Under the pieces are notes generated by a model. That model was not told the origin of the DNA and did not search any database. It was given only the letters and a program-made list of their open reading frames with translations. From Macrostomum lignano (Eukaryota): a stretch of 64,000 bases of DNA. Shown here in pieces: positions 9,227 to 29,229 of the stretch. How positions within the stretch are numbered: the first letter of the stretch is position 1; each line of letters opens with the position of its first letter. The DNA lies in assembly GCA_002269645.1 (NCBI GenBank), contig NIVC01000650.1, forward strand, positions 186,001 through 250,000. Reading direction: 5' to 3'. The position numbers and the translations under genes are program-made.

Positions 9227-9523
9227 CATGCGCAACCTCCAAAATTCGGTTGGCCATGCGACTTAGTTTTAACAAAAATGCGACATCATTTTATTTTTTG
9301 GCCAAAAATGCGACTTGCATGTAAAAAACTGTAAAGCAAAATAAACGCAACTTTGGGTAAACGGCAGGAGTAACTATGACTCTCTTATTAAGCCAACATG
9401 CCTTGTTGGCTACTTAGTACAATAATTCTATTTGAGTGTTTTGTTGGGTTGGGTGTGCATTTTTGGCAACTTCCTTGGTTGGTCGCCAAATCGGTCGGCC
9501 AGATCGGCCGACTGTTGCACATG
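9227..9523. mobile_element. Possible MITE with TA target duplication
   Basis: Imperfect TIRs CATGCGCAAC...GTTGCACATG flanked by TA on both sides; internal ATGCGAC repeats. Confidence 0.4.
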
Positions 9524-11068
9524 TATGTTAATGGTAGAAAAAGAATAGATATTGGCCTACAATGCTGGGGCCATCCGCCATGGCCATCTTGGTCTTACTC
9601 TTACACCAATTTATCCTACTAGGTCTAGGTAGGCTAAACTTTAGGAAGCCCCAAATCTGAAACTTTGTCTTTTTTGAATTTATTAGGGGCCTAGGGCCGC
9701 TATGATTATAATTGTATAAAATGTGCTTTGTGAGTGATGTTGTTTCACACCTACCTGACTGGCTGATAAATTATAATATATTATAAGCCTCGAGTCTAGC
9801 TAGGCAAACTACTCATACTCTGGGACTGATCTGATAGGCCCTAGGCCTACTTCTCGAATCTCGTAGGCCCAACTGAAAATGAAATACAAAGTTAAAAAAG
9901 AAAACAATGCAGATTGCAGAATGCAAAGTAGGGTTGTCAAGTCTAATAGATTCGTGAATTGTGAGGAAGACATTATCGTTTGGGGTACTAACGGAACTGA
10001 GGCTGTGTTGTCGACACGACACTGACTGTCCACCAGACCACCACCGCCAGGTGAGGTGACTGGACTGTGAGCTGTGACAGGTGTCACTTAAAGATTTATT
10101 GGCGATCGTCGATCGATCTCGAGTAAAGTAGTAGAGTAGTAGTAGGCCTAAGTTGGCTCAGGCAAGAAGCCTGTTTGGCCAGTATATTTCTGTGTATTTA
10201 AGATATTTTAGCATTAGTTGTTTAATTACGATTAAGTTAAAAAGGTTAATTTTGTTCAAAAGGTTAAATTTTTACACGAGTTACGATGCGAGTTACGATA
10301 TTTGTAAAATTATAAAGGTATTTGAAAGAGCGTTTTTTTGTAAAAAGATGTAGTATTTTGCAAGCGCGCGATATTTCAAAGCGTGAAAAACGAACGTGAA
10401 CTTCGAAAGAACTTTACGTTTAACGAATAACGACGATTTAAATAGGTATTAGATAGGAAACTAATTAAATACTAATTAAATGCTGATAAATAATGAATAA
10501 CGACGGTTTAAATAGGTAATAGATGGGAAAATAATTAAATACTAATTAAATGCTAATTAAATAGGAAATTAAAAAGACAGTAAATGAATAAACAAATGAA
10601 AAGCGGATTTATTACACTGCTGATATATCTGTTTCAGTTTGCATAACTGTTTTAGCTATTCATGACTTCATATATTTTAGCTACACCAGTGAGCTCTTGA
10701 GTAAATTGGTGATTATCGTGAGTTTGAATTTGCCGCCGAATTTCTGCAAAAGCATACACTGGTTTAAACAAAATAAAGTGGACCTCTGCCTGCCAAAAGT
10801 CTGAGGGTTGCTGTTTTGATAACTAAGCAATCTAAAAATGCATGTATTATCGAAACCATTGGATGGTCTACCAAAGTAAAATAGCTGGAAGCTGCTAAAG
10901 TAGAATAGATGGTGCATGTAGTTTTTATAGCGCAGATTTTTCCAGCGAATATTTTTACGAAGGAATTATTCAATATGTTTGAAAGTTGGGTTATTTCCTA
11001 TGCAACAAATTAACGCTTTTGATTGAACTCTGATGATTGTAGCTGAGTATAGCTACATAATCCCCGTT

Positions 11069-11628
11069 TGTAGTCGTTATAAATGTACTGTACAATACAA
11101 AACAACGTGTATCTCGCAAACCCCTGCATGCATTAGGCACTCTTGTCCCCTAGGACTTTGTCCGTCTCTGGATGCTGCATGGTGGTATTAAGCTGACGTT
11201 GCGGCCAAGACCATACAGTTATATGACAGCGGCCCGCGCGGTGTTATGTTTGAAGGTACACGCCAAGAGGGGGATCTTTTAGCGGTCAGCGGTTTTAGAC
11301 TATAATTCCCTCCTAAGCCCCAAGATTCCAAGAGTGGATAATAATATCTTAATCAATCTTAATGCAATTTCCTTCCTACAGTATTCGTAGATTAGGTTCG
11401 ATGCAGCGCAGGGGGATGGGGATCAGTGCTGGTCCCAGAGCTCTCTCGTGGTTCGTATCGTACGGGGACTAATTTAGAAGTTACTGCTATTGATTTGGTT
11501 AAGTTTGGCTCAATACTTTGGTGATCTTACCCTCTGCGATCCTCATGCAGCGTCTATCCAATATTCTGCGACTGTAGGCGCACTCACATTTCATACCACG
11601 TCTCATGGTAGTATAAATAATAGACTAC
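11069..11628. mobile_element. Candidate solo LTR abutting the gypsy element
   Basis: Starts TGTAGTCG and ends GACTAC(C), an LTR-like terminal inverted motif; no convincing TSD. Confidence 0.3.
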
Positions 11629-11633
11629 CCCCA

Positions 11634-11771
11634 AGTAGTCTGGCTTGTTGGTGCGTGAGCACTTAGATGTGCACGTCTGGCTTGTTTGGGGGTTGGGGTT
11701 TAGCGCTGCGGCGTGTGTGTGCATCCTCACGTTATTTTGTTATTCACTGCAACTCAACCCACGGTCTTACA
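11634..11771 (+). repeat. 5' LTR (138 bp), lacking about 60 bp present in the 3' LTR
   Basis: (A)GTAGTCTGGCTTG...CCCACGGTCTTACA, followed by CTTG-TGGCAGCAG (possible PBS). Confidence 0.85.
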
Positions 11772-11791
11772 CTTGTGGCAGCAGTCTCAGT

Positions 11792-14700
11792 ATGGCCAAA
11801 TCAGAGCAAGCCAGTTTATTGCCTCCAAAGTTTAGCGTCGACTCCAACGTGAGAATGAGGCTAAGCACCTTTGAAGACTTCGTCGACGACTGCGAATGGG
11901 ACGAAAAGAAGAAGGCAAAGAAGCTGAGACTGCTGGTGACAGGAGAAGCGCAAATCTTCGTCTGGGAGCAGCCGGCAGACGTGTCAGCCAGCTATGAAAA
12001 GCTGAAGGAGAAGCTGATCGAGTGCTTCGGCAATAGTCTGAGCTGCTACAGAGCAAATGGAGGAGTTTGAAGGGCGAAAGTGAAGGCCCAACGAGTCGCT
12101 GAGGGAGCTCGCCTACAGCCTGAAGCTTCTCCACCTTCGGGCCCGCCCAGACGACTCCGTGGCGGCTCGGGAAAAGGATGTGAAGTTTCGCCTGATGCGC
12201 CTCCTGCCATCTGCCGAGAGAGATGCGCTGTTGAAGGACCAGGACGCGGACTCGTGTTCGCTGGCCGCCATCGTCAACAGAGCTGCAAGCTTGAGCTGGT
12301 GAGCCACGCAACTATAGCCTCATCAGCTGCGGTGTCGGTGGAAGACAGACGACTGAGCCAGCTGGAGCAGCAGATGCAGCAGCTGACAGCCAGCGTGCAA
12401 ACGGGACCACCCGGAAGAGACAGGCGTCAGAAGGGACCCATTAAGTGCTTCAGCTGTGGCAAGCCGGGTCACATCACTAGGCGGTGCCCAAAAAGCGATC
12501 GGCAGCCGCTGCAGCCGGTGCTCAGGCAAGAGTCACTCCGCCGCGGTGTGCCCGACACCAACTGGTCAGCCGCATGGAAACTTCTGAGGGTCGGCAGCCT
12601 GGGGCCAGCACCGACCCGCTCAAAAGGGGCCCTCAGATCAGCGCCTTCAGTCTTCGTGAAGGTGCACTTTGGCAGCGTGTCAGCGCCTGCTCTGCTCGAC
12701 ACCGGCGCGCAAGTTTCGTTTCATGGACAAGTCGCTGTTCGACAGATTGCCGTGCAAGATCAACTTCACCGATATCGGTGCGCTGCCGACGGCTGTCGAC
12801 AGATCCCGACTGCGCTGCCCTGGCCTGTCAGCAGCGGATGTTTCGATCGGCCAGACCATCCGCGTGCGCCATCGCTTCAAAGTCGTGGACGGCATCCAGC
12901 CCAGCCTGATCATCGGCATGGACTTCATCGGCGAGGTGTCGCGGGCGATGACCATCGACATTAAAGAAGGCTTCGTCAAGTTCGACAGCACAGCTGTGCC
13001 TTTTAGCAGCGAGCCGGCTCGGGCAGACTGTCGCCTGGTGCCGAGTGTCCTGGTGGCTACGGAGCTGCCCGCCCGCTGCGAGAAGCTGGTGTGGCTCAAG
13101 GTGGATTCCAGCGGCGAGCAGGGAGTCTTTGAGCCGGCTGAGAACTTCGTGAAGTCCACTGCCGTCCTGCCGGCCCGCGTGCTGGCGGTCTCGGACGACT
13201 GCCGCATCCCGGTGAAAATGTGCAACCTGGCAGAGGAGCCCGTGCTGCTGTACGCCAACAAGGCGGTCGGCACGTTCGAAGGCGCCATGACAGACGGGAC
13301 GGTCGCTAGGAGGAGACCTAGGAGACCCCGGTCGGTTGGAAGATAGGTTTCGGGATGTGCAACGCCCCGGCGACGTTCCAGCGGCTCATGGAGCTGGTGA
13401 TGTCCGGCCTGTACTGGGAGTCCGTGCTGACTTACATCGACGACATCATTGTGTTCAGCAGGACGTTCGACGGGCACTTGGAGAGGCTGGCGGAAGTTTT
13501 TAGCGGTTGCGAGACGCGGGACTCAAGCTGCACAAGGCCAAGAGCACGTTCGGCCATCGCCGGGTGCTGTACCTGGGACACCTGATCAGCGAGCAGGGCA
13601 TTGCACCGGATCCCGGCAAGGTTGAGGCCATTCGCAGCATGCCCAGCCCACCGACGACCGAGGAGGTGAAGCGGTTTCTCGAAATGCTGGGGTTCTACCG
13701 CTGGTTCATCCCAGGCTTCAGCCAGACGGCGAGGGTCCTGCACGACGTCAGCGTGAAATCGAGGGACTTCGCGTTGAGCAGCGACTGCGAGCGAGCGTTC
13801 CACGAGTTGAAGGACCGGCTGACGACGGCTCTGGTGCTGAGGCTGCCGTATTTCACCAAGCAGTTCGTGCTCATCTGCGACAGCAGTCAGTTCGCCGTCG
13901 GCGCGGTGCTCAGCCAGCTGCACGGAGACGCCAAGCTGCCTGTGGCGTTCGCCTCGCGCACCCTCAACAAGGCCGAGCGCAACTACTCGGCGACCGACCG
14001 CGAGCTGCTGGCGCTGGTCTGGAGTCTAAATCACTTCAGGACGTACCTGCTGAGTGTCCCGAGCTTCAGGGTCTACTCAGACCACCGGCCACTGCAAAGG
14101 TCTGCTGGCAACGAAGGACCCCGAAGGTCGGCTGGCGCGATGGCTTTCGACGCTGCAGCAGTTTTCGTTCAAACTGCTGTACCGGCCTGGCAGGGACAAC
14201 GTCGTGCCGGATGCGCTGAGCCGGGTGGCCGGCACGCGCCTGCAGCCTCGGTGGGACGACAGCAGCCTGCACGAGGAGCAACTGCAAGAGCCACTGCTAA
14301 GCAGGACGTTCCAGGCGCTGACCGAAGGGATTGACATCCTGTCCGATTCATGGGCGGCGCAGGACGAGGCCTTGGTGAGCTCGGCGGGTGTCCTGCTGGT
14401 GCGTGGCCAGCCAGTCATTCCCGGTCATCTGCGGCCATATTTCCTGCAGCAGGGGCACCCGTGCGACCAGAGCGGACACCTCGGCATCGACAGGACCGGA
14501 GCGAAGTTGTCTGAGCGCTGCTGGTGGCCTGGTCTGCGACGAGACGTTGAGAACTGGGTGGCCAGCTGCGCGGTCTGCCTGGCCAAGATGAGTCCAACCA
14601 AGCCGCAGAAGGCGCCGCTGCAGTCGACGTGCCAGCCGACGGCTCCGTGGCAGCTGGTGCAGATCGACATCAAAGGGCCGCTTCGGCGTACGATGAATGG

Positions 14701-15757
14701 CAAGGCGTACATCCTGAGCATGTGTGACGCCTTCTCCAAGTGGATGGAGACGGCAGCCCTGGCGGTGATCGACGCGGTGACGGTGGCGGATGCGCTGCTC
14801 AAGTCGGTGGTTCTGCATCACGGCGCTCCTCAGATGCTGCACTGCAGTGACCAGCTGCGACAATTCGAGAGCGAGGAGTTCGGCCGGCTCTGTGAGCAGC
14901 TGGGCGTCGAGAAGACGCGCACGTCGTCGTTTAATCCGAGCGGCAAAGGAATCGTCGAGCGAGGCAACCGGACGCTCGGCGACATGCTGGCGACGACGGT
15001 TGGCCAAGAACCAGCAGGACTGGGACAGCAAGCTGCTGTATGTGACCTGGGCCTACAGCACCTCCGTGCACAGCACCACCGGCCTCAGTCCGTACCAGGT
15101 CCTCCACGGCTGGCCACCGAGGCTGGCTCTCGACAGCTGGCTGATAAGCGGCGACCGGCCGGCAGCCGACGGTGGACATCACGGCTTCCTGCGGCGGACT
15201 CAGGAGAACCTGCAGAGCGCCTTCGACACGGTGCACAAGGCCGACTGCGGAGCGCCCAGGTCGAGCGCAACCGGCTGGCCAACCAGGACTCTCGGTTTGT
15301 GCCGTTCGAAGAGGGCCAGCTCGTGATGATGCGCAACTCCGTCATCAAACGCGGTCAGACGCAGTGTTTGAGCGCCAAGTGGAAGGGGCCGTACCGAGTC
15401 CTGAGGCGCCTGGGCGAGGTCAATTACCGCATCCAGGACGAGATCGGCCGCAGGCGCCGGCTGGTGGTGCACCACGACCGCCTCAAGCGCTTCGTGCAGC
15501 GGCGGGCGTCACTGGAGCTTCCGGCCGCAGCAGACCGCTGGCCGCTGGCCGCCGACTTCGACAACAACGGAACCGCCGCAGAGCCGCCCGGGCAGGCGGC
15601 CGATCCTAGCGGCGACGCAGTGACCTTCTGGCCCGAGCTGCAGGCAGACAAGGCACCCGAGGAGCCGCCGGCGGCACCGGCCGAGCCGGTCACGGTTCCG
15701 CGGCGGTCGGCAAGAGAGCGGCGGCCACCTGACTTGTACATGGCGGGATTTGCTTGA
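11792..15757 (+). pseudogene. Frameshifted gag-pol with N-terminal half of RT missing
   Basis: Gag MAKSEQ...; zinc knuckle CFSCGKPGHITRRC; protease LLDTGA; RT remnant GMCNAPATFQRLM...YIDD; RNase H CDSS...RELLA...SDH; integrase H-H-C-C zinc finger and IDIKGP...DAFSKW core; pieces lie in different frames. Confidence 0.92.
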
Positions 15758-15793
15758 CTCGGGAAATGTCTTTTGCTTCTAGGGGGAAATTAG

Positions 15794-15991
15794 TGTAGTC
15801 TGGCTTGTGGGTGCGCGTGCACTTAGATGTGCACGTCTGGCTGTTTTTGGGGTTGGGGTTTAGCGCTGCGGCGTGTGTGTGCTTAGGGTGATTACACCCA
15901 CCCCAACTTTGGCATTAAATATATTGGCGTGAGCCAGTGAGGTCTCCTCACGTTTTTGTTATTTCACTGCAACTCAACCCACGGTCTTATA
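15794..15991 (+). repeat. 3' LTR (198 bp)
   Basis: TGTAGTCTGG...CGGTCTTATA directly after the PPT; matches the 5' LTR apart from an indel and several substitutions. Confidence 0.9.
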
Positions 15992-17690
15992 AAGTAAACA
16001 GACAGAAGCAAACGATAGTTGAATAGCTAATGTCCTGAATTACTGGCCCTAAACTTGGACTAATATTAATAAGTTAAGATTGAAAAAGTAGGAGCTATAT
16101 AGATGATTGAGCTACACCGGGCTGACTATACCAAGGGCAGCGCACCAAAGAAAGAAATACATGTACCTTACAGATGCGGCCGACGGCGGGGCTGCTTGGC
16201 ACGGTGGTCGTCGGATAGTCTCGGCGGCGGCTACAGTCACGGACGATCAGTCCAGACGAGACGCGTCAGGAGGTTATAAAGCCAAGGGAAGTTACAGCTC
16301 AGCACGGTGGTTGCAGCTCAGCACCGAAAAGGGAGAAAGGGCTCCGAACGGTTGTTACGGCTCCGAAAGGTCCGTTTAAGGAAACAGTAGGGGAAGGGGA
16401 AGGAAACGCGGAAAGTGGAAAGGGGGGAGCAAAATGACATGGAAATGGAAAGTGCCGCTCAGGCCTCAAAACAGTCTCTTATTTTACTGCCCTGAGATCA
16501 CGTGTCACGCGATCACGAGAGCGTGATGCGTGATATTAATTGAAGGCCGTGACTTAATTGTACTTGACCAAACAACCCTGATGACGTCATCCGTCAGCCG
16601 CGCTGCGATTGGACGAGAAATTGGGGTGGGGCGCAGCGAATAAAAATGATTTATAATGGGGGATTACGTGTAACGTACAGACAGGAAGAAGCTTAGGAAG
16701 ATAAGGGATCATAAAACTGTCACACGCATGAATGATTTTAAACAATAGAAAGGTGAGGATTGGTGCGCGGAGGAGTGGGGTGTGGGATAAGCGTGAATTG
16801 GTGCGTGAGTCATCATGAACCTAATAAGTCATCACTGGGCGCAGGAATCACAGGCGAAGGAGGGAAGGGTGCGCAAAAAATAGTAGGGGGGGGGGGGCAG
16901 AACGTGCCTAACATTAATACTTTTTATAAAAAAAGTTAATTTTATCTATAACACGTAAACATTTACACATTAGTTTTAACAACTTTAAGCTTCTGACTGT
17001 ATGAAAGGTCAACCATAGTGTGTTGACCCTCATTGTATTGTTAACTAGCTGTGATTATAAGAAAATAACGCTGGGTTATTTTCAAATGGCACGGGTTTAA
17101 GATACAAAACGAACAATAAAAGACGCTCAATATGACGTCCACGAATCAGTTCTATAATTGTTCTCTAGGGAGGCTGAAGATTGCTTCATAATTTGCCAGG
17201 TGTGGTTCGAAAGCACTAATTTATTTCTAGGGCTGTGTATCCAGCTGCCTTGAATAATCATTATAATTGGCTGTTGAAATCTGCAATTTTATCGAAATTA
17301 TTCTGTCATTCATTTTTTGATGCATATCGACTCGTGGAGAACAGTGTAAAATTCCTTTATAGGCTCGTAATATACTCGACGTATCTGCTGAAGGCCAGGA
17401 AATGCTACACATGTAGTTACCCTGTATACAGCAGCTATTCTCAAAACGTTTTTTGCAAAAAGCATGCTGCAGCATGTAGCATTAAATAAGCCGTTTTATC
17501 ACAAGCAATCTATACAGATTCTTACATACTGTACATTTCACAACTGAAGTATATCGAAGACGCGTGTTCTACGTTAGTAACGAATGTTTACATCCACAAC
17601 GGGTGTGAGTTGCTTACATTAGCAAGCGTTCAAACTAGTAACAGTAGCTTACACTAGCAACTAGTTAAAGCTTATAAGCAACGGGTGTTT

Positions 17691-17875
17691 ACATTAGCAA
17701 CTAAAGCTTGCATGAGCAACGGTTGTTTACATTAGCAACTAAAGCTTGCATGAACAACGGTTGTCTACATTAGCAACTAAAGCTTGCATGAGCAACGGTT
17801 GTCTACATTAGCAACTAAAGCTTGCATGAGCAACGGTTGTCTACATTAGCAACTAAAGCTTGCATCAGCAACGGT
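17691..17875. repeat. 38-bp tandem repeat (ACATTAGCAACTAAAGCTTGCATGAGCAACGGTTGT(T/C)T)
   Basis: About 5 copies; the last is interrupted by a MITE. Confidence 0.92.
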
Positions 17876-18188
17876 CAGGGACGTCGCCACCGGGGGACAA
17901 GGCGGGACAATCCCCCCCCCAGTAAAAGCTATGGGGGGACATGCCAATTTTTTGTCCCCCCACTCAACCTCTGACCCGTTATGGAAATCAATAATTTTGC
18001 TTCAGGGCTACAAAATATAGCGCCTGCAGCGCCAAAATAAGTACCTGCGGCGCTAAAATGAGTGCCTGCGGCGCCAAAATGAGTGCCTATGACCGCTGAC
18101 AACACTGATTCTGAAAATAGTGTACACGGTACATGTAGAATTCTTGATGGCTTTGTCCCCAACCATAAAATCCATGGCGACGCCGCTG
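17876..18188. mobile_element. hAT-type MITE, 313 bp
   Basis: TIRs CAGGGACGTCGCCA / TGGCGACGCCGCTG (2 mismatches); flanks GCAACGGT and GCAACGAC (6/8); the host repeat resumes afterwards. Confidence 0.7.
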
Positions 18189-18773: not shown

Positions 18774-18781
18774 TATATAAG
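18774..18781 (+). promoter_or_regulatory. TATA box of the peptide-precursor gene
   Basis: TATATAAG 88 bp upstream of the ATG at 18862. Confidence 0.65.
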
Positions 18782-18861
18782 AGAGGCAGGCATCGACTAA
18801 GGAGAATTCTATTCCAAAATCGACTGTTGAAACGCAGACAAACTGACAGACAAGAAGAGAC

Positions 18862-19266
18862 ATGCGCGATTGTAGTTGGACTCTCTGGACTCTGCTCTGC
18901 CTTCTGCTGGCTCTGCTGCACCGTGAGTCTAATTAGGTCTAGTCAGCGAACAACATTTCATGCAATTGAATATCATTGATAAAAAATATAGTGGCATTTG
19001 TTATATTTTCAGAGTGCCATTCTGTTCTAGCTGATCCGCAATTGATGGAAGAAGAGCTGCCTAAACAACCGAACACGAAGCTCAGGGGCGAACCGGTGGA
19101 AGAGCGCTTTCCATCTGTATCTGCTGCGGCTACTTCAGGAGAAGGACTGAAAAACAGCGCTGGTTACGCCGACAATGAGCTCAACCAGTTGCAGAAGCAG
19201 GTTCTGAGGCACGCTGTACTAGTTTCCAAGCGTTGGAGAACTTGGTTTCCTAGACTGCGCATTTGA
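18862..19266 (+). CDS. Unrecognised secreted peptide precursor, 104 aa; exons 18862-18922 and 19013-19266
   Basis: Exon 1 MRDCSWTLWTLLCLLLALLH ends C|GTGAGT; a 90-bp intron ends TTTTCAG|AG; the phase-1 join gives Q. Product: signal peptide (likely cut after VLA), acidic spacer, KR, then WRTWFPRLRI*. Confidence 0.8.
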
Positions 19267-20240
19267 CCGGGAACTGAAAGCAGGCGTCTGAGCAGCAGAT
19301 GGAGCGCGAGACAGCGATTAACGGAAGAAGAAAATTTCAGTTTTGATTATTTACTTTCTAAATTTCGTTATTTTCTGTTGTGAAAATATTACAGAGAGTA
19401 CTCGTAGAAGTGAAATAGATTCTGAAGCAAAATAATTGCTAACTTTACGCAGAGAAGCTTTACACTCCCAATTCTGCTAAGGATCAATCGTGTAATCTTT
19501 TAAGTCCTTCAATGCACTGTGTGCTCTCGTAGCCGGCAGTGTTTCAAACCATTAAAGGTAGAAAAAATACCGTCGCAAACTTCGTACATTCGGGAGTCTC
19601 CGTCGCGTTTGGGCAAGACAAAATTTGACAACGATACGAGATACTCCTGACCCAGACAGCACAATCAGTAACAATTACGCTGCATTATTACGCAAAGGCG
19701 TACGCAAAATGATTCTTTTTGCGGGCAGCCTGGTAGACTGCAGAGAGCATCATCGAACTGATGCGTACCGTTTAGTCTAATGAGAGACAATAACAAGAAT
19801 AAGAGAGACGAGCTAATAATCATCCTCTTTTAGGAGAATCAGTCCGCTCACCAAGAATCAGACTCTAACTCAAACTCGGCTCAAACTCGATGTTTGCAAA
19901 AAATGCAGGAGTTAGAAAGGCCTCTTCTGCGTTTACATAAAAATGTTGCAAGCTCCAGTGCTATTTACAAGCAGAATTTTACACATATGTACGCACATAC
20001 ACTGTATAACTCGCAATTTGTCGGTGAGATTTAATAAAAGTTTTAATTCTGGACTACGAGTAATTTTACCGCCATTATCATTGCTTCTCATTACGAATAT
20101 TTCTCTGGAGACCGGCTGTACAAAACTTCCAAATGAAAGCAGATTGTGTCTTTGAAGTTTGAGAGCGCTACGGGGAGTGCACGAGTACATATTTAGGATG
20201 CAATTTAACTGTGTACAGAAACAAAGAGAGCGGGACAGCT

Positions 20241-20300
20241 GAGCAGCTCAGCGGTAGTCGCGTCTGACTCTTGCGCCACGACCCCTGGTTTGATTCCGTG
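20241..20300 (+). mobile_element. tRNA-derived SINE head (degenerate)
   Basis: A-box-like AGCTCAGCGGTAG and B-box-like GGTTTGATTCC; shares CGTCTGACT with a similar head at 58877-58935. Confidence 0.45.
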
Positions 20301-20989
20301 CACCTCGGCTCGTACAGTCTCCGCGCGCTTGTATGTGCGCTGGAATGGGCAGAATGGCCTCAGTGCTGGTTTGAGCACTGCACGATGTCACCAAACGTTC
20401 TATGCGCCATGTAGAGTGCAAAATATTTACATATATAGGCGTATATACATATTTATCGTACGAAAACTTCCAGACCAATTTGCCGAAACAAATTATTGTT
20501 TGCTTAGAATCGACGCCAATCACAAGGGTCTTCAGTGCGAGAGCCAGACGCTTTTAACGATGAGTTGCTTTGCCCCCCCACTATCCAACATATGTGATTT
20601 AAAAACTTTTCCATCAGTTCTAGTCCCAAACTCATATGAAATTGATGGCTGCACGCAAGCAGAGATTAATTGCGCTGCCTCAATGACATGCCTCAAGCAG
20701 ATGCCGCCGCGGCGACAGGAAAATTTCAAATCGGCTGGAAAAATGTTGATAATATGTTTCATAGCTACATACGCTCGTACCACGGTGCGTATAAAGAGAA
20801 ATAAATGCAAAAAACGCGAAAAATGATAGACTGTTGTTTCAAAAGTTCTTTGCTTGCAGTTATGTTTCTGATGCATCGTTGATTAAACAATATATTTATG
20901 TTGTATTTTCCGCTTCCGTCCGTGTCGACCGATTATTGGGATTTCCCAGAGCTTGCCGGGTATAATAGGTGGGAGAGCGGCCACCCCTG

Positions 20990-21575
20990 AGGAGCTTACG
21001 GACACTTCAGGGCGGAAGTGGAGGGGCGCGGAGCTTACGGACACTTCAGGGCGGAAGTGGAGGGGCGCGGAGCTTACGGACACTTCAGGGCGGAAGTGGA
21101 GGGGCGCGGAGCGTACGGACACTTCATGGCGGAAGTGGAGGGGCGCGGAGCTTACGGACAATTCAGGGCGGAAGTGGAGGGGCGGGGAGCTTACGGACAC
21201 TTCAGGGCGGAAGTGGAGGGGCGCGGAGCTTACGGACACTTCAGGGCGGAAGTGGAGGGGCGCGGAGCTTACGGACACTTCAGGGCGGAAGTGGAGGGGC
21301 GCGGAGCTTACGGACACTTCAGGGCGGAAGTGGAGGGACGGGGAGCTTACGGACACTTCAGGGCGGAAGTGGAGGGGCGCGGAGCTTACGGACACTTCAG
21401 GGCGGAAGTGGAGGGGCGCGGAGCTTACGGACACTTCAGGGCGGAAGTGGAGGGACGGGGAGCTTACGGACACTTCAGGGCGGAAGTGGAGGGACGGGGA
21501 GCTTACGGACACTTCAGGGCGGAAGTGGAGGGGAGCAGAGCTTACGGACACTTCAGGGCGGAAGTGGAGGGGCGG
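20990..21575. repeat. 39-bp GC-rich minisatellite (GAGCTTACGGACACTTCAGGGCGGAAGTGGAGGGGCGCG)
   Basis: About 15 copies; 13-codon period explains four overlapping repeat ORFs. Confidence 0.97.
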
Positions 21576-21943
21576 GGAGCGTACGAACAGACGGACAGTC
21601 GCCCAGCCCTACGACAAGAAGGATCGGTTCGGATGAGGAGACTCAGCAGCACCAGAGAGGTGGACACGGGTCTGTAGAGGCGTACGGACACTTCACAGAC
21701 CCGAGCGAATCACTCAAAATAAGTAGTGGTAGAGAGAGCAGTGAGGGCGAAAGCCGGGCAAGGACCGCGCGCACACAAATACTGCATGAGTGGAGAGCAG
21801 GGGGCTAGGTGGGACTAAGCCACGCAGGGCTGGGGGTGCGGGGGGGGGGCAAAACTCACAGAGTTGAAGGGCGAGGGAGAAAGAAGGGGGAAGGCCAGCC
21901 AATCAGGTGCCTCCGCGGCGAGAGACATGATTGGACTAGCCCA

Positions 21944-21946
<3 letters not shown>

Positions 21947-22016
<70 letters not shown>

Positions 22017-22050
22017 GAGAGAGAGAGAGAGGGGGGGAGGGAGAGAGAGA
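21947..22050. repeat. (GA)n microsatellite
   Basis: Direct reading. Confidence 0.95.
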
Positions 22051-22522
22051 GGCGAAAAGACGCCAGCCAATAAAAATGAAAACGAGACAAATAAAGTGAA
22101 GAATGGCAGCTTAAGACGGAGGGGGGGAGATCAGAATGAACCAGCGATAGGGAGAGGAGAGGTGGAGAGCGCAGGGGTCAGTGCAAGGGCATTGAGGCGC
22201 AGCTCACAAAATTTATTCGGTAATCTGACTCGATTGCTTACATTCCTTGAATATGGACACCAGGACCTAAATAGCCTTTGCTTGCATCTAGACACAGTGT
22301 GACTAAGGTCTGCGTTCACCTGCATGGCGTTTGCGTATATTTCGTGCGATAAATAACGACAAGACTGTATGTCGAATGAATACAGCGAGTCAACTCGCTC
22401 GTAGCCATCAAGCATCCATGCCCGAACCACTCAGATGAAACCAGACCAGAAGAAATGGTCACTATTTCAACAAGCTTCTCGTAAATCTTCTCACAAACTT
22501 TAAACGGAAGATAACCTCCTGC

Positions 22523-23689
22523 TCATAATTCGCACACTCTGTCGGAGCCAGCAATTGGAGTCGTCGCAGCATCATAGGCATTTGGCATGTTACATGTAGC
22601 TGCTCTAGAAGATCCAGACTGCCAGTGCTTGAAATTCTCACCATCGCAGCAGCGACAGCAGCGTCCAGCTCGGGTCAGCATGGCTCGATAGTGACGTCGA
22701 AACTTCGTCGCAACTAGATAGGGCAGCCAATTCAGTGCGGGATTCAGATACATCACATGATTGAGCAGGACAGCTAGCCGGTGAGTAACCCGAGTACAGT
22801 CCACCGCGCCCAGGTGGTGCAGCAGCTTTAGAACGCAGTACGGCGCTTCACAGGCAATGAAGATCAGGCTGGTAAAGGCGAAGATCCGCGTCTGCGCGGA
22901 GGCTGCGGTAGCTGCCAGATGGCTGACGTTGCTGCTAACGCCAGGGCAAGACGTTAAGGAGCCGTTGAAATTCTGCTGGCTGCGTCTCAGACTGACCAGG
23001 ATAACGGCCAGGGACGTCAGGAGAGCCACGAACACCAGCAGGCGAGAGGCGAATACTGTGTACAGCCGGTACACTACTTCAATCCAGTCGTTTTGCCGGA
23101 ACAGACAGCGCGACTGTTGTCTGCTCCAGAAGGCGCTGGCCACCCGGACGCAGGGCAGGAGGCTGAGCAGTAGCAGCAGCGCCTGCCAGGCGACAATGTT
23201 CCGCCGACGCAGCAGACTGCGCTGCCGCATGGGCGCCAGAGTGACGACAAGCGAGTGCAGACAGAAGCCCAGGCGTAAGAAGGGGCTGCCGTGCAGCAGC
23301 CACAGGGTGGCCAGGTAGTAGGCCACGCACACCGGGAAGTTGGACTCGGTTCGGAAGATCGGCACGCCCAGAGTCAGTCCGAGGACGCTGGGCGCCAGGT
23401 AGTGCGTGACCGACTTTCCTCCTACCAGCAGGAGGTCCACGCAGCAGGTGGTGAGCATGCAGAGCCGCACGGAGAACGGGAAGCACTTCGGGTGCCGCAG
23501 CAGCACCAGCAGGCAGCTGGCGTTGCCCCAGACTCCCAGCGACATCAGCAGCGGGAAGAGCCACGAGAAGACGTGGACATGAAACTGACGATAGTCGAGC
23601 TGCCAGCTCGGTTTTTGCGTTGATGAGTTCCGAGAGACGTTGAAGCTCGGCAAATCGTCATCGAACCATTCGGGTTCGAGTTTCGACAT
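22523..23689 (-). CDS. Intronless divergent class A GPCR, 388 aa, resembling FMRFamide/myosuppressin/sex-peptide-receptor-like peptide receptors
   Basis: N-glycosylation sites NVS and NSS; seven hydrophobic segments; TM1 GN, TM2 D, Cys at top of TM3 and in ECL2, TM6 CEAP, TM7 NPALNWLPY, helix-8 FR. The DRY position reads HSL. Confidence 0.88.
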   Translation of the reverse strand: MSKLEPEWFDDDLPSFNVSRNSSTQKPSWQLDYRQFHVHVFSWLFPLLMSLGVWGNASCLLVLLRHPKCFPFSVRLCMLTTCCVDLLLVGGKSVTHYLAPSVLGLTLGVPIFRTESNFPVCVAYYLATLWLLHGSPFLRLGFCLHSLVVTLAPMRQRSLLRRRNIVAWQALLLLLSLLPCVRVASAFWSRQQSRCLFRQNDWIEVVYRLYTVFASRLLVFVALLTSLAVILVSLRRSQQNFNGSLTSCPGVSSNVSHLAATAASAQTRIFAFTSLIFIACEAPYCVLKLLHHLGAVDCTRVTHRLAVLLNHVMYLNPALNWLPYLVATKFRRHYRAMLTRAGRCCRCCDGENFKHWQSGSSRAATCNMPNAYDAATTPIAGSDRVCEL

Positions 23690-25088
23690 GCTTGTCTACA
23701 GAATTTTGCAGTGAGTTTTGTTTTTAAACTAAAGTTTCAGCTAAATTTTATTGTACTCGTAGAGAGTTTGCATTTATACCGATGTCAGTAGGTACGAGCG
23801 TAAGTCCTGATTGGTCCGTTTGATGAATGGGTGCATCGTAAATTTGATCCTTCAGCCTATTAGTCCTGTGTTATCTCAGATAAAATCTCGTGATATAGCT
23901 GTCCCTTGATTAAATTAGGTATAGGCAATCAGAAAGTGTATTCAAAACATTTGATGCGATAAAATTGTCAACTGAAGTGATACGAAATATCAGCATAAAA
24001 CCCGTCCATAATATTCTGGTATGTCGGCCGAACTTCGCTGCAATTTAGCGACGCGACGACGTCGGTAGACGCCTTAAACGTCGGCTTGGGTCGCTGACGT
24101 CGGATTTTTGAATAAGAAAGAATTACAGTGTACGAAAAGGATGCTTTGGCGCTACTAAATCAGGAATCGCATGCATTCGAGAGCATATGCAGTTAATAAA
24201 AAACAGCATATATGTACCGGCAATGAAGGCACTTCCAATGCTAACCCCGATTAATTCTGGCACAGGCTAAAATATGCTTTAAAATCTGTTTAATCCGTAA
24301 CTACTGCCTTTAGATAAGTGAATTATAATCATACAGAACGAGAATGAATGCTTTCTTTCTCTCCATCTATCGTCTCTATCAGTCGAACAGTAACTCAATT
24401 TGATTGCGTACTTATTACGAGCGTACTGCATGCAAATGACGAACTTTCTGAAATGAATTTCACCTAGAAATTTAATTCTACTTTTACTTTTGGGATTAGA
24501 TAGATCTCAAATCTCTCTCTAGGTGATATAACACGCCTTAAATAAAGTAAATTGCCGCACAGGTTTCATCACTCCCTCTTTGAATACAACTGAAAATGGA
24601 CTCGATATTACACAAGAGTTAAATAATCAGCATGCCACCAATACTTTCCACTCCCTTTGAGTGCAACCTAGAAAAAAGTTGCTAGGAAAAATTATACCAA
24701 TGGCTCGTTACCAAAGGCTGATTGAGTTTATTTAGTAGCTCGTAAAAGATACATAAAATCCCTCACAAATCTTTGGGGCTGGCAGATTACAGGTTTTACA
24801 AGCGACGCTAAACTGCGCATGTAACGCGGGGCTCATTACAATTCATAGTTAGCTATTTCAGCACAGTGAGCTGTGAAGTCACAAAATTTAGTCAGCACTT
24901 GAAATGCAAATGTCTGGCTGGAGACGTGGACTCACGTGACACATCTTGCATACGAGCTAAAAAGGGAGAGCGCACATACAGCTACACAATATAAACTCCA
25001 GCAACCATAGCTACAGCTGCTAACTTTATCTTAACTGACTGCTGATAAAAGACTGACAAGGAGAACTCCTGACACAACAATAATAAGC

Positions 25089-26951
25089 ATGGTTGGCGCA
25101 TCACTTGCTTCTAGTGATAAGCAGAAAACTGACTGGAAAATCTGGACTTCGTTCAAAAGCAACCCAAACATTATGCAGCTGAAACGGCACTGGCGAGTCC
25201 TGCCGCTGCTGCTGGCGCCGGTGCTGCTGTCGCCACTGCTGACGATGGGCTCCGAGAAGGCCCGCTGCGCCTACCTACTGCTGCTGATGGCCACCTACTG
25301 GGTGCTTGAGCTGCTGCCGCTGAGCCTCACCGCCGTGCTGCCCTTCTTCCTCGGTCCGCTGCTGCGCATCGGCACCTGTCATGAGCTCGCCAAGTCCTAC
25401 TTCACCGACATCCACTTCCTCATGATTGGCGGCGTCATGCTGTCCGTGGCCATGGAGGACACAGGACTCAGCCGTCGGTTCGCCCTTCGAACTGTGGCGC
25501 TGCTGGGAACGCGGCCGCGCTGGCTGCTGCTCGGCTTCATGCTGCCCTCCTGGCTCATGTCCATGTGGATGAGCAACACCGGCACCACCATCCTCATGTT
25601 CCCCTTCGTGATGGCGGCAATCGCCGAGACAGAGAAGGCTACCGAGCAGCTGCAGGACGCCCCTGATCGAGAGTCGCTCGCGCTCGACCAGCGAGAAAAG
25701 CACCCTACAGCGACTGACTGCGAAGGCGCCGCTGCAGAGCCTCCGCGGCCGTGCGAGGACGGCCTGGACTCCAACACTGTCGGCAAGACGCGTCACAAAA
25801 CACACACTCGAAGCCACGCAGTCTGCTACTGTCTCTCCGTGGCCTACGCCTGCAACGTAGGCGGAGTGGCCACTCTGATCGGCACCGGAACCAACCTCGT
25901 GCTCGTTGGACAACTCCAGCAGATCTACCGCGTCTCCAATGTGGTCACCTTCTCCAACTGGATGGCCTTCAGCTTGCCGTTGTCGCTGTTCAGCCTGTTG
26001 CTCATCTGGTTGCTGCTCCAGCTTGTTTTTGTTGGTCCGCGTGACACCTTTAACTGGCGCTCGCAGTCGGCCGAACAGAAGCGACAGGAGGCTCGGGTGA
26101 AGCTCTACTTCCACCAGCAGCTGGAGGCTCTCGGGTCAGTTTCGTTCGCCGAGTGGGCCACCATGGCCGCTTTTCCTTGCGTGCTGCTGCTCCTGCTGAC
26201 AGGCAAGCTGACCTCCAGCTTCGGCTGGCACTACCTGTTCGGCTCCGTCAACGACAAGCCGGTCGTGTCCGACGCCACCGGAATGCTGCTGGTCGCTTTG
26301 CTGCTCACTCTGATCCCCAACCCCGACCTGACCGAGGAGCACGGACCGACCAACAGTCTGGGATATCGAGCCGTCGCTCGGTGGGATCGAGTCCTGCTCA
26401 AGATCCCGCTCGACATCATGCTGCTCATCGGAGGAGGCCTCGCTCTAGCCAAGCTCACTAAGGACACCAAGCTGTCAGAGACCATCGGGTCCGCCCTAAC
26501 TCCCACACTGCAGGCGCTGCCCACCGAGCTGACGCTGCTGCTGCTCAGCTTCTGCGTCATCTGGCTCACGGAAGTCACCTCCAACATGGCCACCGCCTCC
26601 GTCCTGCTGCCCATAGTAGCCCAGATCGCCGCCTGTCTCGGACACAATCCGCTGCTGTTCATGGTCTCGCTCACCGTCACCTGCTCGTTCGCGTTCTGCC
26701 TACCGACCGCCACACCGCCAAATGCCATCGTGTTCGGCAGCGGCCGGGTCAGCATTCCCAGCATGGCCAAGGCCGGGCTCGTGCTCAATCTGGTTTTCTC
26801 GGTTTTTATTCCTCTGTACGCTTTGTTAGTCGGTCGTTGGGTATACAGCGTGCACGAATTGCCCAAGTGGGCGGAGTCTTCGTCGACTTCCTGCTCCGGC
26901 AGCAATCAAACGTCGAGTAACTACATGAACTCTACAAAGCTGGCTGGTTAG
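25089..26951 (+). CDS. SLC13: SLC13 Na+/dicarboxylate-citrate cotransporter (NaDC/NaCT/Indy-like), copy A, 620 aa
   Basis: Motifs SMWMSNTGT, AYACNVGGVATLIGT, TEVTSNMAT and LPTATPPNAIVF; TATA-like AATATAAA near 24989. Alternative ATG at 25173. Confidence 0.95.
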   Translation: MVGASLASSDKQKTDWKIWTSFKSNPNIMQLKRHWRVLPLLLAPVLLSPLLTMGSEKARCAYLLLLMATYWVLELLPLSLTAVLPFFLGPLLRIGTCHELAKSYFTDIHFLMIGGVMLSVAMEDTGLSRRFALRTVALLGTRPRWLLLGFMLPSWLMSMWMSNTGTTILMFPFVMAAIAETEKATEQLQDAPDRESLALDQREKHPTATDCEGAAAEPPRPCEDGLDSNTVGKTRHKTHTRSHAVCYCLSVAYACNVGGVATLIGTGTNLVLVGQLQQIYRVSNVVTFSNWMAFSLPLSLFSLLLIWLLLQLVFVGPRDTFNWRSQSAEQKRQEARVKLYFHQQLEALGSVSFAEWATMAAFPCVLLLLLTGKLTSSFGWHYLFGSVNDKPVVSDATGMLLVALLLTLIPNPDLTEEHGPTNSLGYRAVARWDRVLLKIPLDIMLLIGGGLALAKLTKDTKLSETIGSALTPTLQALPTELTLLLLSFCVIWLTEVTSNMATASVLLPIVAQIAACLGHNPLLFMVSLTVTCSFAFCLPTATPPNAIVFGSGRVSIPSMAKAGLVLNLVFSVFIPLYALLVGRWVYSVHELPKWAESSSTSCSGSNQTSSNYMNSTKLAG

Positions 26952-27339
26952 TACGCCGTATTATTGAGTTTAGGGCTTCGTAGCTCAAACTTTAAACTCG
27001 AATTTCTTTAATTTGCAGCTTAAAGCGGTTAGATAAATTTCTATTATCTTAAAGTATACTGATTTTGCCAGAGTAGTTTTTTCCGTCTGGCTATTTGTCA
27101 CACAGCTAAGTTGCTTGAAGCAGGTGTGACTTAGAAGTCCTATAAGTAACTTCTATTTATCTTTAGTTTTTACTAAATGAAAAGCAAAACTACAAAAAAG
27201 TACGAATAATATTCCTTTTAAAAAATCATTTGTGCCTGACACAGACTAAAGCATAGACCGCCAGAAATAACTGTTCTATCCAATAGTTTCTCTGCATTAG
27301 TCGGCAATAAAGTAGGATGTATGGGGTACTCAAAATTGA

Positions 27340-27672
27340 GTAATAATAATTTTTTTAATAATTGATTCCACCTGCCCTAATGGGCAGCTTTGTGCAACCG
27401 ACAGCTCAGCCGCAGCTATTGCGCTGCGCATCTGAAGACTGCGTACATAGCTGTTCAGTCCAAGGACTGTTGGGTGTCGCCACACACCCTTAATTATCTT
27501 AGCTAATGCTGGTACCCATTCTTCAGCTGAGTGAACTGAAGCAATGAAAAGTTTTGCAAAGTCAATGCAAAGTGTCTTGTTGAAGGACACAAACTGTTTC
27601 GAGTGGTTCGAGAATCAAACCGGCCTTTGAGTCCTGAGTCCGAAGCTCTTCTAACGACTAAGCCACAACCCC
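27340..27672 (-). mobile_element. tRNA-derived SINE with conserved central domain and (ATT)n tail
   Basis: Minus strand: A-box TGGCTTAGTCG, B-box GGTTTGATTC, then GTGTCCTTCAACAAGACACTT and CACTCAGCTGAAGAATGGGTACC (resembling conserved SINE body domains), ending ATTATTATTAC. Confidence 0.7.
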
Positions 27673-27769
27673 TACTGAGACTGAACATTTAATTACAGGG
27701 TTCTTAATGGCCTACATGTACATGTACATGCATGGGATGTCTTGGCGTGCGAATCTTCAAAGTCTCAGG

Positions 27770-28766: not shown

Positions 28767-29229
28767 TGGACGTTTTCACGTTGCAAGGATGCCGTCAAAC
28801 AACAATGACATTTTCGGTCCTATGAAAATCGACTGCCGCAATTTAACTGCCGGCTACATTTGACCTCTGGAATTTTGCTGCTAATTTAGCCCTAGCCCCA
28901 AACCTTTTCAACATTAAACCGAACTGAACTATAACTCTAATCTGAACCCTAATTCCAAACTTTAACCAATGAACACAAGTTTCTGTATCTTCTAAAGAAA
29001 AGTTATTTTAGAGCCGCAGAATTCTATACTGTAGCTATAGTATATGAAACAATAACAAATACTGACAAGGTACATAGGTAAAGGCATGATGCTCTATATA
29101 TCTGTTTAAGTGCATAATTAAAGATGATGGCGTGTATAAATCAGTGCAAACTCGTATCTTGCTGAAACATTGGAACAGTAAAGATATCTACTTGCTATGC
29201 AGCAACCAACAATAATAAAAGATTAAAGA

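What the first reader, a model, noticed from the sequence alone, without database searches (positions are those of the whole stretch)
18774..19266. Hidden two-exon gene for an orphan secreted peptide: signal + acidic spacer + KR + WRTWFPRLRI
The ORF track misses this gene. TATA box, ATG, hydrophobic signal, GTGAGT donor and TTTTCAG acceptor join in phase to give MRDCSWTLWTLLCLLLALLHQCHSVLA-DPQLMEEELP...QVLRHAVLVSKR-WRTWFPRLRI*. A dibasic site releasing one C-terminal peptide is standard prohormone logic (established). The decapeptide contains FPRL, recalling PRXamide/pyrokinin ends, but has no amidation glycine. It is also Trp/Arg-rich and cationic behind an acidic pro-piece, as in many antimicrobial peptide precursors. 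I recognise no family: it could be a new neuropeptide, gland or seminal peptide, or antimicrobial peptide.
Basis: partly seen in the sequence, partly recalled or inferred. Interest (0 to 1): 0.78.

Follow-up and report, generated by a model that had tools for sequence, protein, structure and literature searches.

The report
Unannotated small secreted-protein gene, Macrostomum
The two-exon reading frame is really there and looks like a small, species-restricted secreted-protein gene of the flatworm Macrostomum lignano, but nothing available here shows that it is expressed or that its tail is cut off as a hormone-like peptide.

Summary
The window is Macrostomum lignano contig NIVC01000650.1, positions 186001-250000. 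The described anatomy is exact. A TATATAAG box lies at 18774 and the first ATG at 18862. A 61-nt exon 1 is followed by a GTGAGT donor, a 90-nt AT-rich phase-1 intron and a TTTTCAG acceptor. Exon 2 runs to the TGA at 19264-19266, giving a 104-aa product.

The whole combination is rare by chance: 0.13 per shuffled 64 kb, and 0.0017 when the TATA box is also required. Splice motifs, GC contrast and codon-position GC all fit a real gene.

The product has a plausible signal peptide, an acidic disordered middle, and a basic Trp/Arg-rich C-terminus predicted to be helical.

No homologue was found in 5.8 billion or 1.8 billion proteins, Pfam or PDB. The gene is absent from the GenBank annotation.

The prohormone reading is only compatible, not supported. 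A dibasic site leaving a 5-25 aa tail arises in 36% of composition-matched shuffles. The pyrokinin resemblance fails because there is no amidation glycine.

A homeologous contig exists. Only the last 27 nt of the gene (TWFPRLRI plus stop, identical) could be retrieved, so conservation remains untested.

Verdict: a probable orphan secreted-protein gene, of ordinary kind and modest interest.

The parts
18774..18781 (+). TATA box TATATAAG, 88 nt upstream of the ATG
   Evidence: This octamer occurs only twice on the + strand of the window and never on the - strand.
18809..18815 (+). Initiator-like CTATTCC (matches YYANWYY). Its A at 18811 lies 37 nt after the first T of the TATA box. This is an inferred transcription start.
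   Evidence: Read from the sequence. The motif is frequent by chance, so this is inference only.
18862..18922 (+). Exon 1 coding part (61 nt, GC 57%): MRDCSWTLWTLLCLLLALLH plus the first base of codon 21.
18923..19012 (+). Phase-1 intron of 90 nt, GC 30%, GTGAGT...TTTTCAG.
   Evidence: The motifs match the M. lignano cis-splice consensus GT[G/A]AG and CAG (PMC8629364). Only 5% of 90-nt windows nearby are this AT-rich.
19013..19032 (+). Rest of the predicted signal peptide (QCHSVLA). Candidate cleavage sites are CHS|V and VLA|D.
   Evidence: Judged by the -3/-1 rule by eye; SignalP was not available.
19025..19030 (+). Alternative in-phase acceptor TTCTAG. It would give a 98-aa isoform.
19033..19227 (+). 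Acidic spacer, aa 28-92 (pI 4.97, net charge -3). The N-terminal roughly 40 residues are modelled as disordered. A helix begins near aa 67.
19228..19233 (+). AAG CGT, encoding Lys93-Arg94. This is the only dibasic site in the protein.
19234..19263 (+). C-terminal WRTWFPRLRI (net charge +3, average mass 1430.7 Da).
   Evidence: The last 8 codons are identical in the homeologous contig.
19264..19266 (+). TGA stop codon.
   Evidence: It is conserved in the homeologue.
19267..19570 (+). Putative 3' UTR. There is no AATAAA; the nearest variant signals are AATAGA at 19414 and ATTAAA at 19551.
   Evidence: It is about 95% identical to the homeologue.

Best explanation
This is most likely a real but unannotated, lineage-restricted gene of Macrostomum lignano.

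**Gene and transcript**
- A TATA-box promoter drives a short transcript with one 90-nt phase-1 intron.
- That intron splits the signal-peptide coding region.

**Protein**
- The 104-aa product enters the ER through an N-terminal signal peptide: h-region WTLWTLLCLLLALL, with cleavage after Ser24 or Ala27.
- It is secreted as a protein of about 77-80 aa.
- The N-terminal part is acidic and disordered. The C-terminal roughly 30 residues (NELNQLQKQVLRHAVLVSKRWRTWFPRLRI, net charge +6) form a basic amphipathic helix ending in a Trp/Arg-rich tail.

**Function**
- The active part is most probably this cationic C-terminus.
- It would act outside the cell either intact or after convertase cleavage at Lys93-Arg94, which would free WRTWFPRLRI.

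**What is shown and what is inferred**
- Shown: the sequence anatomy, its rarity by chance, its orphan status, and the existence of a homeologous locus.
- Inferred: transcription, splicing, secretion, processing and any activity.

**My split, given that it is a real gene**
- Secreted effector of gland, epidermal, host-defence or reproductive type: about 0.5.
- Neuropeptide-type prohormone: about 0.3.
- Other: about 0.2.
For: **Exactness of the model**
- The in-phase two-exon model reproduces exactly.
- The first ATG after the perfect TATA box has a purine at -3 and no upstream ATG.

**Rarity**
- The architecture is unique in the window and absent from three further M. lignano loci (62.8 kb; L004 overlaps the window).
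- Its expectation is 0.13 per shuffled window, and 0.0017 with the TATA box required.

**Species-specific signals**
- Donor and acceptor match the species' own consensus motifs.
- If the SL (spliced-leader) sequence, which ends in ATG, were trans-spliced onto exon 2, the frame would hit a stop after 6 codons. The cis join is therefore the productive one (sequence read).

**Composition**
- GC is 57% and 51% in the exons, against 30% in the intron and 37-41% in the flanks.
- GC by codon position is 0.61/0.44/0.52.
- The codon log-odds score (-0.08) sits in the top 2% of 49 non-genic ORFs and matches a control exon (-0.13).

**Protein features**
- The best 12-mer hydropathy is 2.76. Shuffles reach this together with the rest of the architecture 0.007 times per window.
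- The charge split is -3 for the spacer and +3 for the tail.
- A helix is predicted at precursor residues 67-98.

**Homeologue**
- Contig NIVC01004268.1 is collinear on both sides. It leaves a 2649-bp gap against 2566 bp in the window.
- Its retrieved edge carries TWFPRLRI plus TGA unchanged.
Against: **No expression evidence**
- No transcript evidence was accessible.
- The gene is missing from the GenBank annotation, which was built from RNA-seq plus TransDecoder.
- It is apparently also missing from the UniProt/UniRef set. My inference is that this set includes proteins from a second annotated assembly.

**No relatives**
- No homologue or paralogue was found anywhere.

**Weak points in the supporting tests**
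- The codon test was trained on only 710 codons and does not separate the frames: the +1 frame scores higher.
- There is no canonical AATAAA downstream.
- The ORF length alone is unremarkable.
- About 20 such loci are expected by chance genome-wide (extrapolated).
- The 27 identical bases in the homeologue are uninformative at about 5% divergence.
- The structure model is single-sequence, with mean pLDDT 64.
Confidence: 0.55

Rival explanations
1. Neuropeptide-type prohormone. After signal-peptide removal, a PC2-type convertase cuts after Lys93-Arg94 in dense-core vesicles. This releases the non-amidated decapeptide WRTWFPRLRI as a signalling peptide. A further trim to WRTWFPRL is possible.
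For: - The layout of signal peptide, acidic spacer, KR and terminal peptide is there.
- Planarian 'spp' prohormones are similarly short.
- MS has confirmed non-amidated peptides that end at the precursor C-terminus after a single dibasic site, and non-amidated ...FRL peptides such as KR.GYHFFRL.KK.
- M. lignano has a nervous-system PC2 homologue whose knock-down is lethal.
- KR followed by an aromatic residue is a favoured convertase context (established knowledge).
Against: - The KR plus tail arrangement arises in 36% of composition-matched shuffles.
- There is one copy only, no amidation glycine, and no similarity to any flatworm npp/spp/ppl precursor or any other protein.
- The predicted helix runs through the cleavage site (low confidence).
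- The 65-aa spacer is long for such precursors.
Confidence: 0.18
2. Host-defence-type secreted protein. An anionic pro-region masks a cationic, Trp/Arg-rich, membrane-active C-terminus. This would work like cathelicidin/LL-37, the trematode helminth defence molecules, or indolicidin/tritrpticin-type peptides.
For: - The charges are balanced at -3 and +3. The C-terminal 30-mer carries +6 and has hydrophobic moments up to 0.67.
- A C-terminal helix follows a disordered N-terminus.
- Helminth defence molecules are about 90-aa precursors with a signal peptide and an approximately 35-residue C-terminal amphipathic helix released by proteolysis (PMC3093369).
- Orphan status and fast turnover are typical of immune and reproductive secreted proteins (general knowledge).
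- The W/R/P-rich tail resembles tritrpticin and indolicidin in composition (from memory, not tested).
Against: - There is no cathelin domain and no Pfam hit.
- The HDM signature EKI[X9]R[X2]D[X]L is absent (sequence read).
- No sequence homology to any such protein was found.
- Activity is purely conjectural. HDMs themselves lack antimicrobial activity (title of PMC3708846).
Confidence: 0.2
3. Not a functional gene. It could be a chance alignment of a TATA-like box, an ATG, a hydrophobic run, splice-like motifs and a 97-codon open frame. Alternatively it is an untranslated or young 'proto-gene' locus.
For: - It is absent from the RNA-seq-based GenBank annotation and from UniProt-derived sets.
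- No homologue was found anywhere.
- ORFs of 80-99 aa are common in this stretch.
- About 20 chance loci of this architecture are expected per genome.
- The codon test is not frame-specific.
- There is no AATAAA.
Against: - The expectation is only 0.0017 per window for the looser architecture with TATA.
- The exon/intron GC contrast and the codon-position GC pattern are those of coding sequence.
- The splice motifs match the species consensus.
- Short secreted-peptide genes are routinely missed by pipelines using TransDecoder-type length and score filters (general knowledge).
Confidence: 0.3

Closest known systems
Planarian 'secreted peptide prohormones' (Smed-spp-1 to -19; Collins et al. 2010, PMC2953531)
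   Same: - Short precursor with an N-terminal signal peptide, an acidic spacer and a KR site.
- Some release non-amidated peptides that end at the precursor C-terminus (SPP-3, SPP-17).
- Many have no homologues outside flatworms.
   Different: - No sequence similarity.
- The spacer here is long (65 aa) and there is only one candidate peptide.
- The planarian genes were validated by MS and in situ hybridisation. This one has no expression evidence.
Pyrokinin / PRXamide peptides, including planarian ppl-1 (YFSPRMGKR repeats, YFSPRLGK)
   Same: The tail contains W-F-P-R-L, which fits aromatic-X-P-R-L if Trp stands in for Phe.
   Different: - There is no Gly amidation donor and no dibasic site after it. 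Leu is followed by Arg-Ile-stop.
- It is single copy, against 5 tandem copies in ppl-1.
- No precursor similarity.
Flatworm 'FRL-containing' non-amidated peptides (Smed spp-18/-19 GYHFFRL; Schistosoma npp-28 AYHFFRL)
   Same: A non-amidated short peptide preceded by KR, with aromatic residues followed by R-L.
   Different: - YHFFRL is flanked by dibasic sites on both sides and sits near the N-terminus of its precursor, followed by a Cys-containing region.
- Here the motif is FPRL followed by R-I-stop.
- There is no alignment beyond 'RL'.
Helminth defence molecules (FhHDM-1, Sm16 clade) and cathelicidin CAP18/LL-37
   Same: A small secreted flatworm protein of about 90-104 aa, with a signal peptide and a C-terminal amphipathic helix that could be released proteolytically.
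   Different: - HDMs are trematode-specific, helical throughout, and carry the EKI[X9]R[X2]D[X]L signature. They are cut by cathepsin L rather than at a KR site.
- The signature and any homology are absent here.
- There is no cathelin domain.

Membership tests
Pyrokinin / PRXamide (FXPRLamide) | C-terminal pentapeptide F-X-P-R-L/M | tested here: inconclusive
   W98-F99-P100-R101-L102 fits only if Trp replaces the Phe. Read as F-P-R-L, the X residue is missing. Planarian ppl-1 has Y-F-S-P-R-M/L.
Pyrokinin / PRXamide (FXPRLamide) | Gly amidation donor directly after the Leu, followed by a basic cleavage site | tested here: not met
   Leu102 is followed by Arg-Ile-stop, with no Gly.
Pyrokinin / PRXamide (FXPRLamide) | Precursor homology, or multiple tandem copies of the peptide | tested here: not met
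   There is a single occurrence. No hit to any pyrokinin, PBAN or ppl precursor in 5.8e9 or 1.8e9 proteins or in Pfam.
Neuropeptide prohormone (operational class; flatworm npp/spp) | Cleavable N-terminal signal peptide | tested here: inconclusive
   The n, h and c regions and two sites obeying the -3/-1 rule are present. The h-region of 14-15 residues is too short for a membrane anchor. No trained predictor such as SignalP was available.
Neuropeptide prohormone (operational class; flatworm npp/spp) | Peptide delimited by convertase sites, at a frequency beyond chance | tested here: inconclusive
   One KR is present at residues 93-94, and the C-terminus of the peptide is the stop codon. The arrangement arises in 36% of shuffles.
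Neuropeptide prohormone (operational class; flatworm npp/spp) | Neuronal or endocrine expression, PC2-dependent processing, and detection of the peptide by MS | not testable with these tools
   No RNA-seq, in situ or peptidomic data were reachable. A PC2 homologue exists in the species.
Neuropeptide prohormone (operational class; flatworm npp/spp) | Peptide conserved more strongly than the spacer in relatives | not testable with these tools
   The homeologous copy lies in an unretrievable 2649-bp gap of NIVC01004268.1. Only the last 27 nt were seen, and they are identical.
Helminth defence molecules (HDM) | Signal peptide plus a conserved C-terminal amphipathic helix of about 35 residues | tested here: inconclusive
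   A helix is predicted at residues 67-98, with hydrophobic moment up to 0.67. The model is single-sequence with pLDDT 64.
Helminth defence molecules (HDM) | Signature EKI[X9]R[X2]D[X]L, or sequence homology to FhHDM-1/Sm16 | tested here: not met
   The motif is absent from the 104-aa sequence, and no homologues were found.
Cathelicidin | Cathelin-like pro-domain | tested here: not met
   No Pfam family matches, even at E <= 10.

The most novel reading that the evidence does not exclude
The locus encodes the founding member of a Macrostomum-specific bioactive peptide. One possibility is a non-amidated neuropeptide ending in ...WFPRL(RI). That would be a divergent offshoot of the flatworm RL/FRL-type or pyrokinin-like peptides that has lost amidation. 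The other is the first Trp/Arg-rich antimicrobial peptide with an anionic pro-piece described from a free-living flatworm.
Probability: 0.15. Interest if true: 0.5.

Novelty: new member of a known kind. Interest (0 to 1): 0.27.

Why it matters
**If real**
- It would add one gene to the M. lignano catalogue.
- It would illustrate that short, TATA-driven, two-exon secreted-peptide genes escape RNA-seq/TransDecoder-based annotation in this model flatworm.
- M. lignano is transgenic-tractable, so a strong compact promoter with a short signal-peptide exon could also be a useful secretory-cell reporter.

**If the peptide proved bioactive**
- It would be a new lineage-specific peptide.
- That would matter for flatworm neurobiology, reproduction or innate immunity.

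**Why interest is limited**
- Orphan small secreted proteins are very common in flatworm genomes.
- One more unvalidated prediction does not open a long-standing question.

Tried and rejected
1. **Word-indexed homology search.** The 104-aa product gave no hit at E <= 10.
2. **Exhaustive phmmer search.** The exon-2 product was searched against 1.84e9 representative proteins. Six hits came back, all long tandem-repeat translations whose E-values come from summing up to 13 copies of one weak match of about 25 bits (11/31 identities). I rejected them as artefacts.
3. **Family, structure and RNA libraries.** Pfam, PDB sequence search and Rfam gave nothing.
4. **Paralogue in the window.** tblastn and blastn found none.
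5. **JGI metagenome scan.** There was one hit, L006, on a compact prokaryote-like contig. It shares the seeded 9-mer DNELNQLQK and little else, so I rejected it as a chance match.
6. **Fetching the homeologous gene.**
   - I used flanking annotated genes as anchors: the SLC13 paralogue P0127 gave L002, and the LITAF paralogue P0129 gave L003.
   - Both loci are collinear with the window, but they stop 27 nt inside the gene's 3' end and about 2.2 kb upstream of its ATG.
   - No annotated gene lies in between.
   - A third LITAF copy, L005, is flanked by satellite DNA and lacks the candidate.
8. **Literature.** A search for the peptide string gave 0 papers. McVeigh 2009 (PMC2749192) is not held.
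9. **SL trans-splicing onto exon 2.** I rejected this: the ATG of the SL would read MSAILF-stop.
10. **Codon-usage test.** It is only weakly informative and not frame-specific.

Full report
**Source**

A look-up of the neighbouring transporter protein places the window on NCBI assembly GCA_002269645.1, contig NIVC01000650.1 (404,995 bp). Window position n corresponds to record position n + 186,000. The literature identifies this accession (NIVC00000000, Mlig_3_7) as the genome of the free-living flatworm Macrostomum lignano.

**The observation**

Everything described is at the stated coordinates:
- TATATAAG at 18774.
- The first downstream ATG at 18862, with a purine at -3, no intervening ATG, and an in-frame stop 5 codons upstream.
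- 61 coding bases, then GTGAGT at 18923.
- A 90-nt intron ending in TTTTCAG at 19012.
- A 254-nt second exon ending in TGA at 19264-19266.

Read unspliced, the frame terminates 4 codons into the intron.

A second in-phase acceptor (TTCTAG, ending at 19030) would give a 98-aa isoform without QCHSVLA.

**Is it more than chance?**

Taken one at a time, the features are weak.
- ORFs of 80-99 codons are common in this stretch.
- TATAWAWR occurs 44 times in the window.

Taken together, they are rare. I scanned for a deliberately looser architecture: an ATG, a hydrophobic 12-mer in the first 35 aa, a GTRAGT donor within exon 1, a 40-500 nt intron, a Y-rich YAG acceptor, and an in-phase ORF of at least 90 aa.
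- The scan finds only this locus on both strands of the window.
- It finds none in three further M. lignano loci (62.8 kb; L004 overlaps the window).
- In 1,200 block-wise Markov shuffles it occurs 0.13 times per 64 kb.
- Requiring hydrophobicity as strong as observed lowers this to 0.007.
- Requiring a TATA box at -130 to -40 lowers it to 0.0017.

Independent signals agree.
- The donor and acceptor are the species' own top cis-splice motifs: GT[G/A]AG in about 65% of donors and CAG in about 60% of acceptors (PMC8629364).
- GC is 57% and 51% in the exons, against 30% in the intron and 37-41% in the flanks.
- GC by codon position is 0.61/0.44/0.52.
- Only 5% of neighbouring 90-nt windows are as AT-rich as the intron.
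- A crude codon log-odds score puts the CDS in the top 2% of 49 non-genic ORFs, level with a control exon. The score was trained on just 710 M. lignano codons from the window. It does not separate the reading frames, so I count it as weak support.
- The M. lignano spliced leader ends in ATG. Trans-splicing it to the exon-2 acceptor would read MSAILF-stop, so only the cis join is productive.

Caveat: extrapolating 0.0017 per window to a 764-Mb genome still predicts about 20 chance loci.

**The product**

- *Signal peptide.* Residues 1-27 have a short n-region (MRDCS), a 14-15-residue h-region (best 12-mer Kyte-Doolittle mean 2.76) and a c-region. The c-region holds two sites that obey the -3/-1 rule, CHS|V and VLA|D. 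The h-region is too short for a membrane anchor. No trained signal-peptide predictor was available.
- *Spacer.* Residues 28-92 are acidic (pI 4.97, net charge -3).
- *Tail.* WRTWFPRLRI carries +3, and the last 30 residues carry about +6 with hydrophobic moments up to 0.67.
- *Structure.* A single-sequence AlphaFold model has low confidence (mean pLDDT 64). It leaves the first roughly 45 residues after the signal peptide unstructured. It predicts one helix over precursor residues 67-98, running straight through Lys93-Arg94 into WRTW.

**The prohormone claim**

KR at 93-94 is the only dibasic site. With 15.6% Lys plus Arg in the mature protein, however, such sites are expected.
- 87% of composition-matched shuffles have at least one dibasic site.
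- 36% have one that leaves a 5-25-residue C-terminal piece.

The layout is therefore compatible with convertase processing but is not evidence for it.

Context from planarian peptidomics (PMC2953531) helps on both sides.
- *For the claim.* Short precursors with a signal peptide, an acidic spacer and KR are the rule. Non-amidated peptides that end at the precursor C-terminus after a single dibasic site have been sequenced by MS (SPP-3 KR.FQIKDIENLD.#; SPP-17 KK.IIDPMTYGTGFSNL.#). A class of non-amidated '...FRL' peptides also exists (KR.GYHFFRL.KK).
- *Against the claim.* The genuine flatworm pyrokinin-like precursor ppl-1 has five tandem YFSPR[M/L]-G-K(R) units. The candidate has none of the defining Gly or following dibasic site, and is single copy.

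M. lignano does possess a nervous-system PC2 homologue (PMC4490696).

**Relatives**

None were found.
- The word-indexed search of 5.8e9 proteins returned nothing at E <= 10.
- The exhaustive phmmer search of 1.84e9 representatives returned six long tandem-repeat translations. Their significance comes from summing up to 13 copies of one match of about 25 bits.
- Pfam and PDB gave nothing, and Rfam found nothing in the window.
- There is no paralogue in the window.
- One JGI metagenome hit shares only the seeded 9-mer DNELNQLQK, in a prokaryote-like contig.

**Annotation status**

The window's other annotated proteins are in the protein collection: SLC13 (P0001) and LITAF (P0128 = PAA79149.1). 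The candidate is not. No called gene overlaps window 19230-29230.

The GenBank annotation derives from genome-guided RNA-seq assembly, with coding potential estimated by TransDecoder. Non-coding and repeat-overlapping transcripts were removed (PMC5730564). Absence is therefore mild evidence against robust expression, or it reflects filters that disfavour a 104-codon ORF.

**The homeologue**

M. lignano is a neopolyploid. Cluster look-ups revealed paralogues of both flanking genes on contig NIVC01004268.1 (52,324 bp).
- The two retrievable loci are collinear with the window at about 91-98% identity.
- L002 (record 4759-26531) matches window 19240-31517.
- L003 (record 29181-49459) matches window 1-16673. 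It includes the same LTR retrotransposon, carrying a 1.1-kb deletion.
- The candidate's homeologue must lie in the 2649-bp gap between them (2566 bp in the window).
- L002 ends 27 nt inside the gene. ACT TGG TTT CCT AGA CTG CGC ATT TGA is identical there, while the following roughly 560 nt of 3' flank are about 95% identical.
- At that divergence, 27 identical bases mean little.
- No annotated gene lies within 10 kb of the gap, so the decisive comparison could not be made.

**Conclusion**

The best reading is a genuine, unannotated, lineage-restricted gene for a small secreted protein whose business end is a cationic Trp/Arg-rich C-terminus. I put this at about 0.55. The probabilities below are rough and are not an exact partition.
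- Release of that end as a decapeptide neuropeptide is about 0.18 overall.
- A host-defence or gland effector role is about 0.2 for the specific AMP-like version.
- About 0.3 remains for 'no functional gene'.

It is not a pyrokinin/PRXamide, HDM or cathelicidin family member. It is one more candidate of a common kind, the orphan secreted peptides of flatworms, so interest is modest.

**Neighbourhood**

These features are not part of the finding.
- A LITAF-domain gene at 3583-4336 (-).
- A Ty3/gypsy-type LTR element at about 11.6-16.1 kb.
- An inverted pair of intronless SLC13/DASS symporter genes at 25.1-27.0 and 29.2-31.0 kb.
- A Tc1/mariner transposase ORF at 50.9-52.0 kb.
- Several tandem arrays.

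Noticed in passing
window 25089-26951 (+) and 29230-31002 (-): An inverted pair of intronless SLC13/DASS sodium-coupled anion symporter genes, about 97% identical at the protein level. Only the second is in the GenBank annotation. The nearest non-Macrostomum relatives are only about 34% identical (ticks, Ciona), followed by many bacterial DASS proteins.
   Followed up: partly
window 11635-16100: A GC-rich (62%) LTR retrotransposon. It has 88-nt-plus LTR matches at 11635 and 15795, a gag zinc knuckle and Ty3-type integrase domains. The same insertion, with a 1.1-kb internal deletion, is present in the homeologous contig, so it predates the duplication.
   Followed up: partly
window 3583-4336 (-): A two-exon LITAF-domain gene (PAA79149.1, BOX15_Mlig009274g1) with a PPxY-rich N-terminus. 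It is separated from its LITAF exon by a repetitive 'LPDPQLLGQPPRSS' stretch. A third copy lies at record 340158-341027 of the same contig, in inverted orientation and preceded by a satellite array (L005 1-1500).
   Followed up: partly
window 20883-21640: A 39-bp tandem array that is open in at least four reading frames (for example ELTDTSGRKWRGA repeats). It produces long spurious ORFs 1.6 kb downstream of the candidate.
   Followed up: no
window 1-595, 1143-2225 and 17636-17913: Further tandem or low-complexity arrays: a 24-bp satellite at the window start, a Ser/Pro/Leu-rich 360-codon open frame, and a 19/38-bp repeat 0.9 kb upstream of the candidate's TATA box.
   Followed up: no
window 50946-52022 (+) and 54856-55959 (+): A Tc1/mariner (Sleeping Beauty-type HTH) transposase ORF, and an ORF with a weak GTF2I-like repeat match.
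   Followed up: no
window 19025-19030: An alternative in-phase 3' splice site (TTCTAG) 18 nt downstream of the TTTTCAG acceptor. Using it would delete QCHSVLA and change the predicted signal-peptide cleavage region.
   Followed up: partly
L006 989-1075 (JGI contig Ga0209777_10167277): A membrane-anchored Cys-rich ORF in a compact prokaryote-like contig. It shares DNELNQLQK and a loosely similar S-x-x-W-x-x-aromatic-aromatic-P-x-L stretch with the candidate's C-terminus. I judged it a chance match seeded by the exact-word search.
   Followed up: partly
window 22523-23689 (-): A 388-codon ATG-initiated ORF with no Pfam match. It is not in the GenBank annotation, and its nature is unknown.
   Followed up: no
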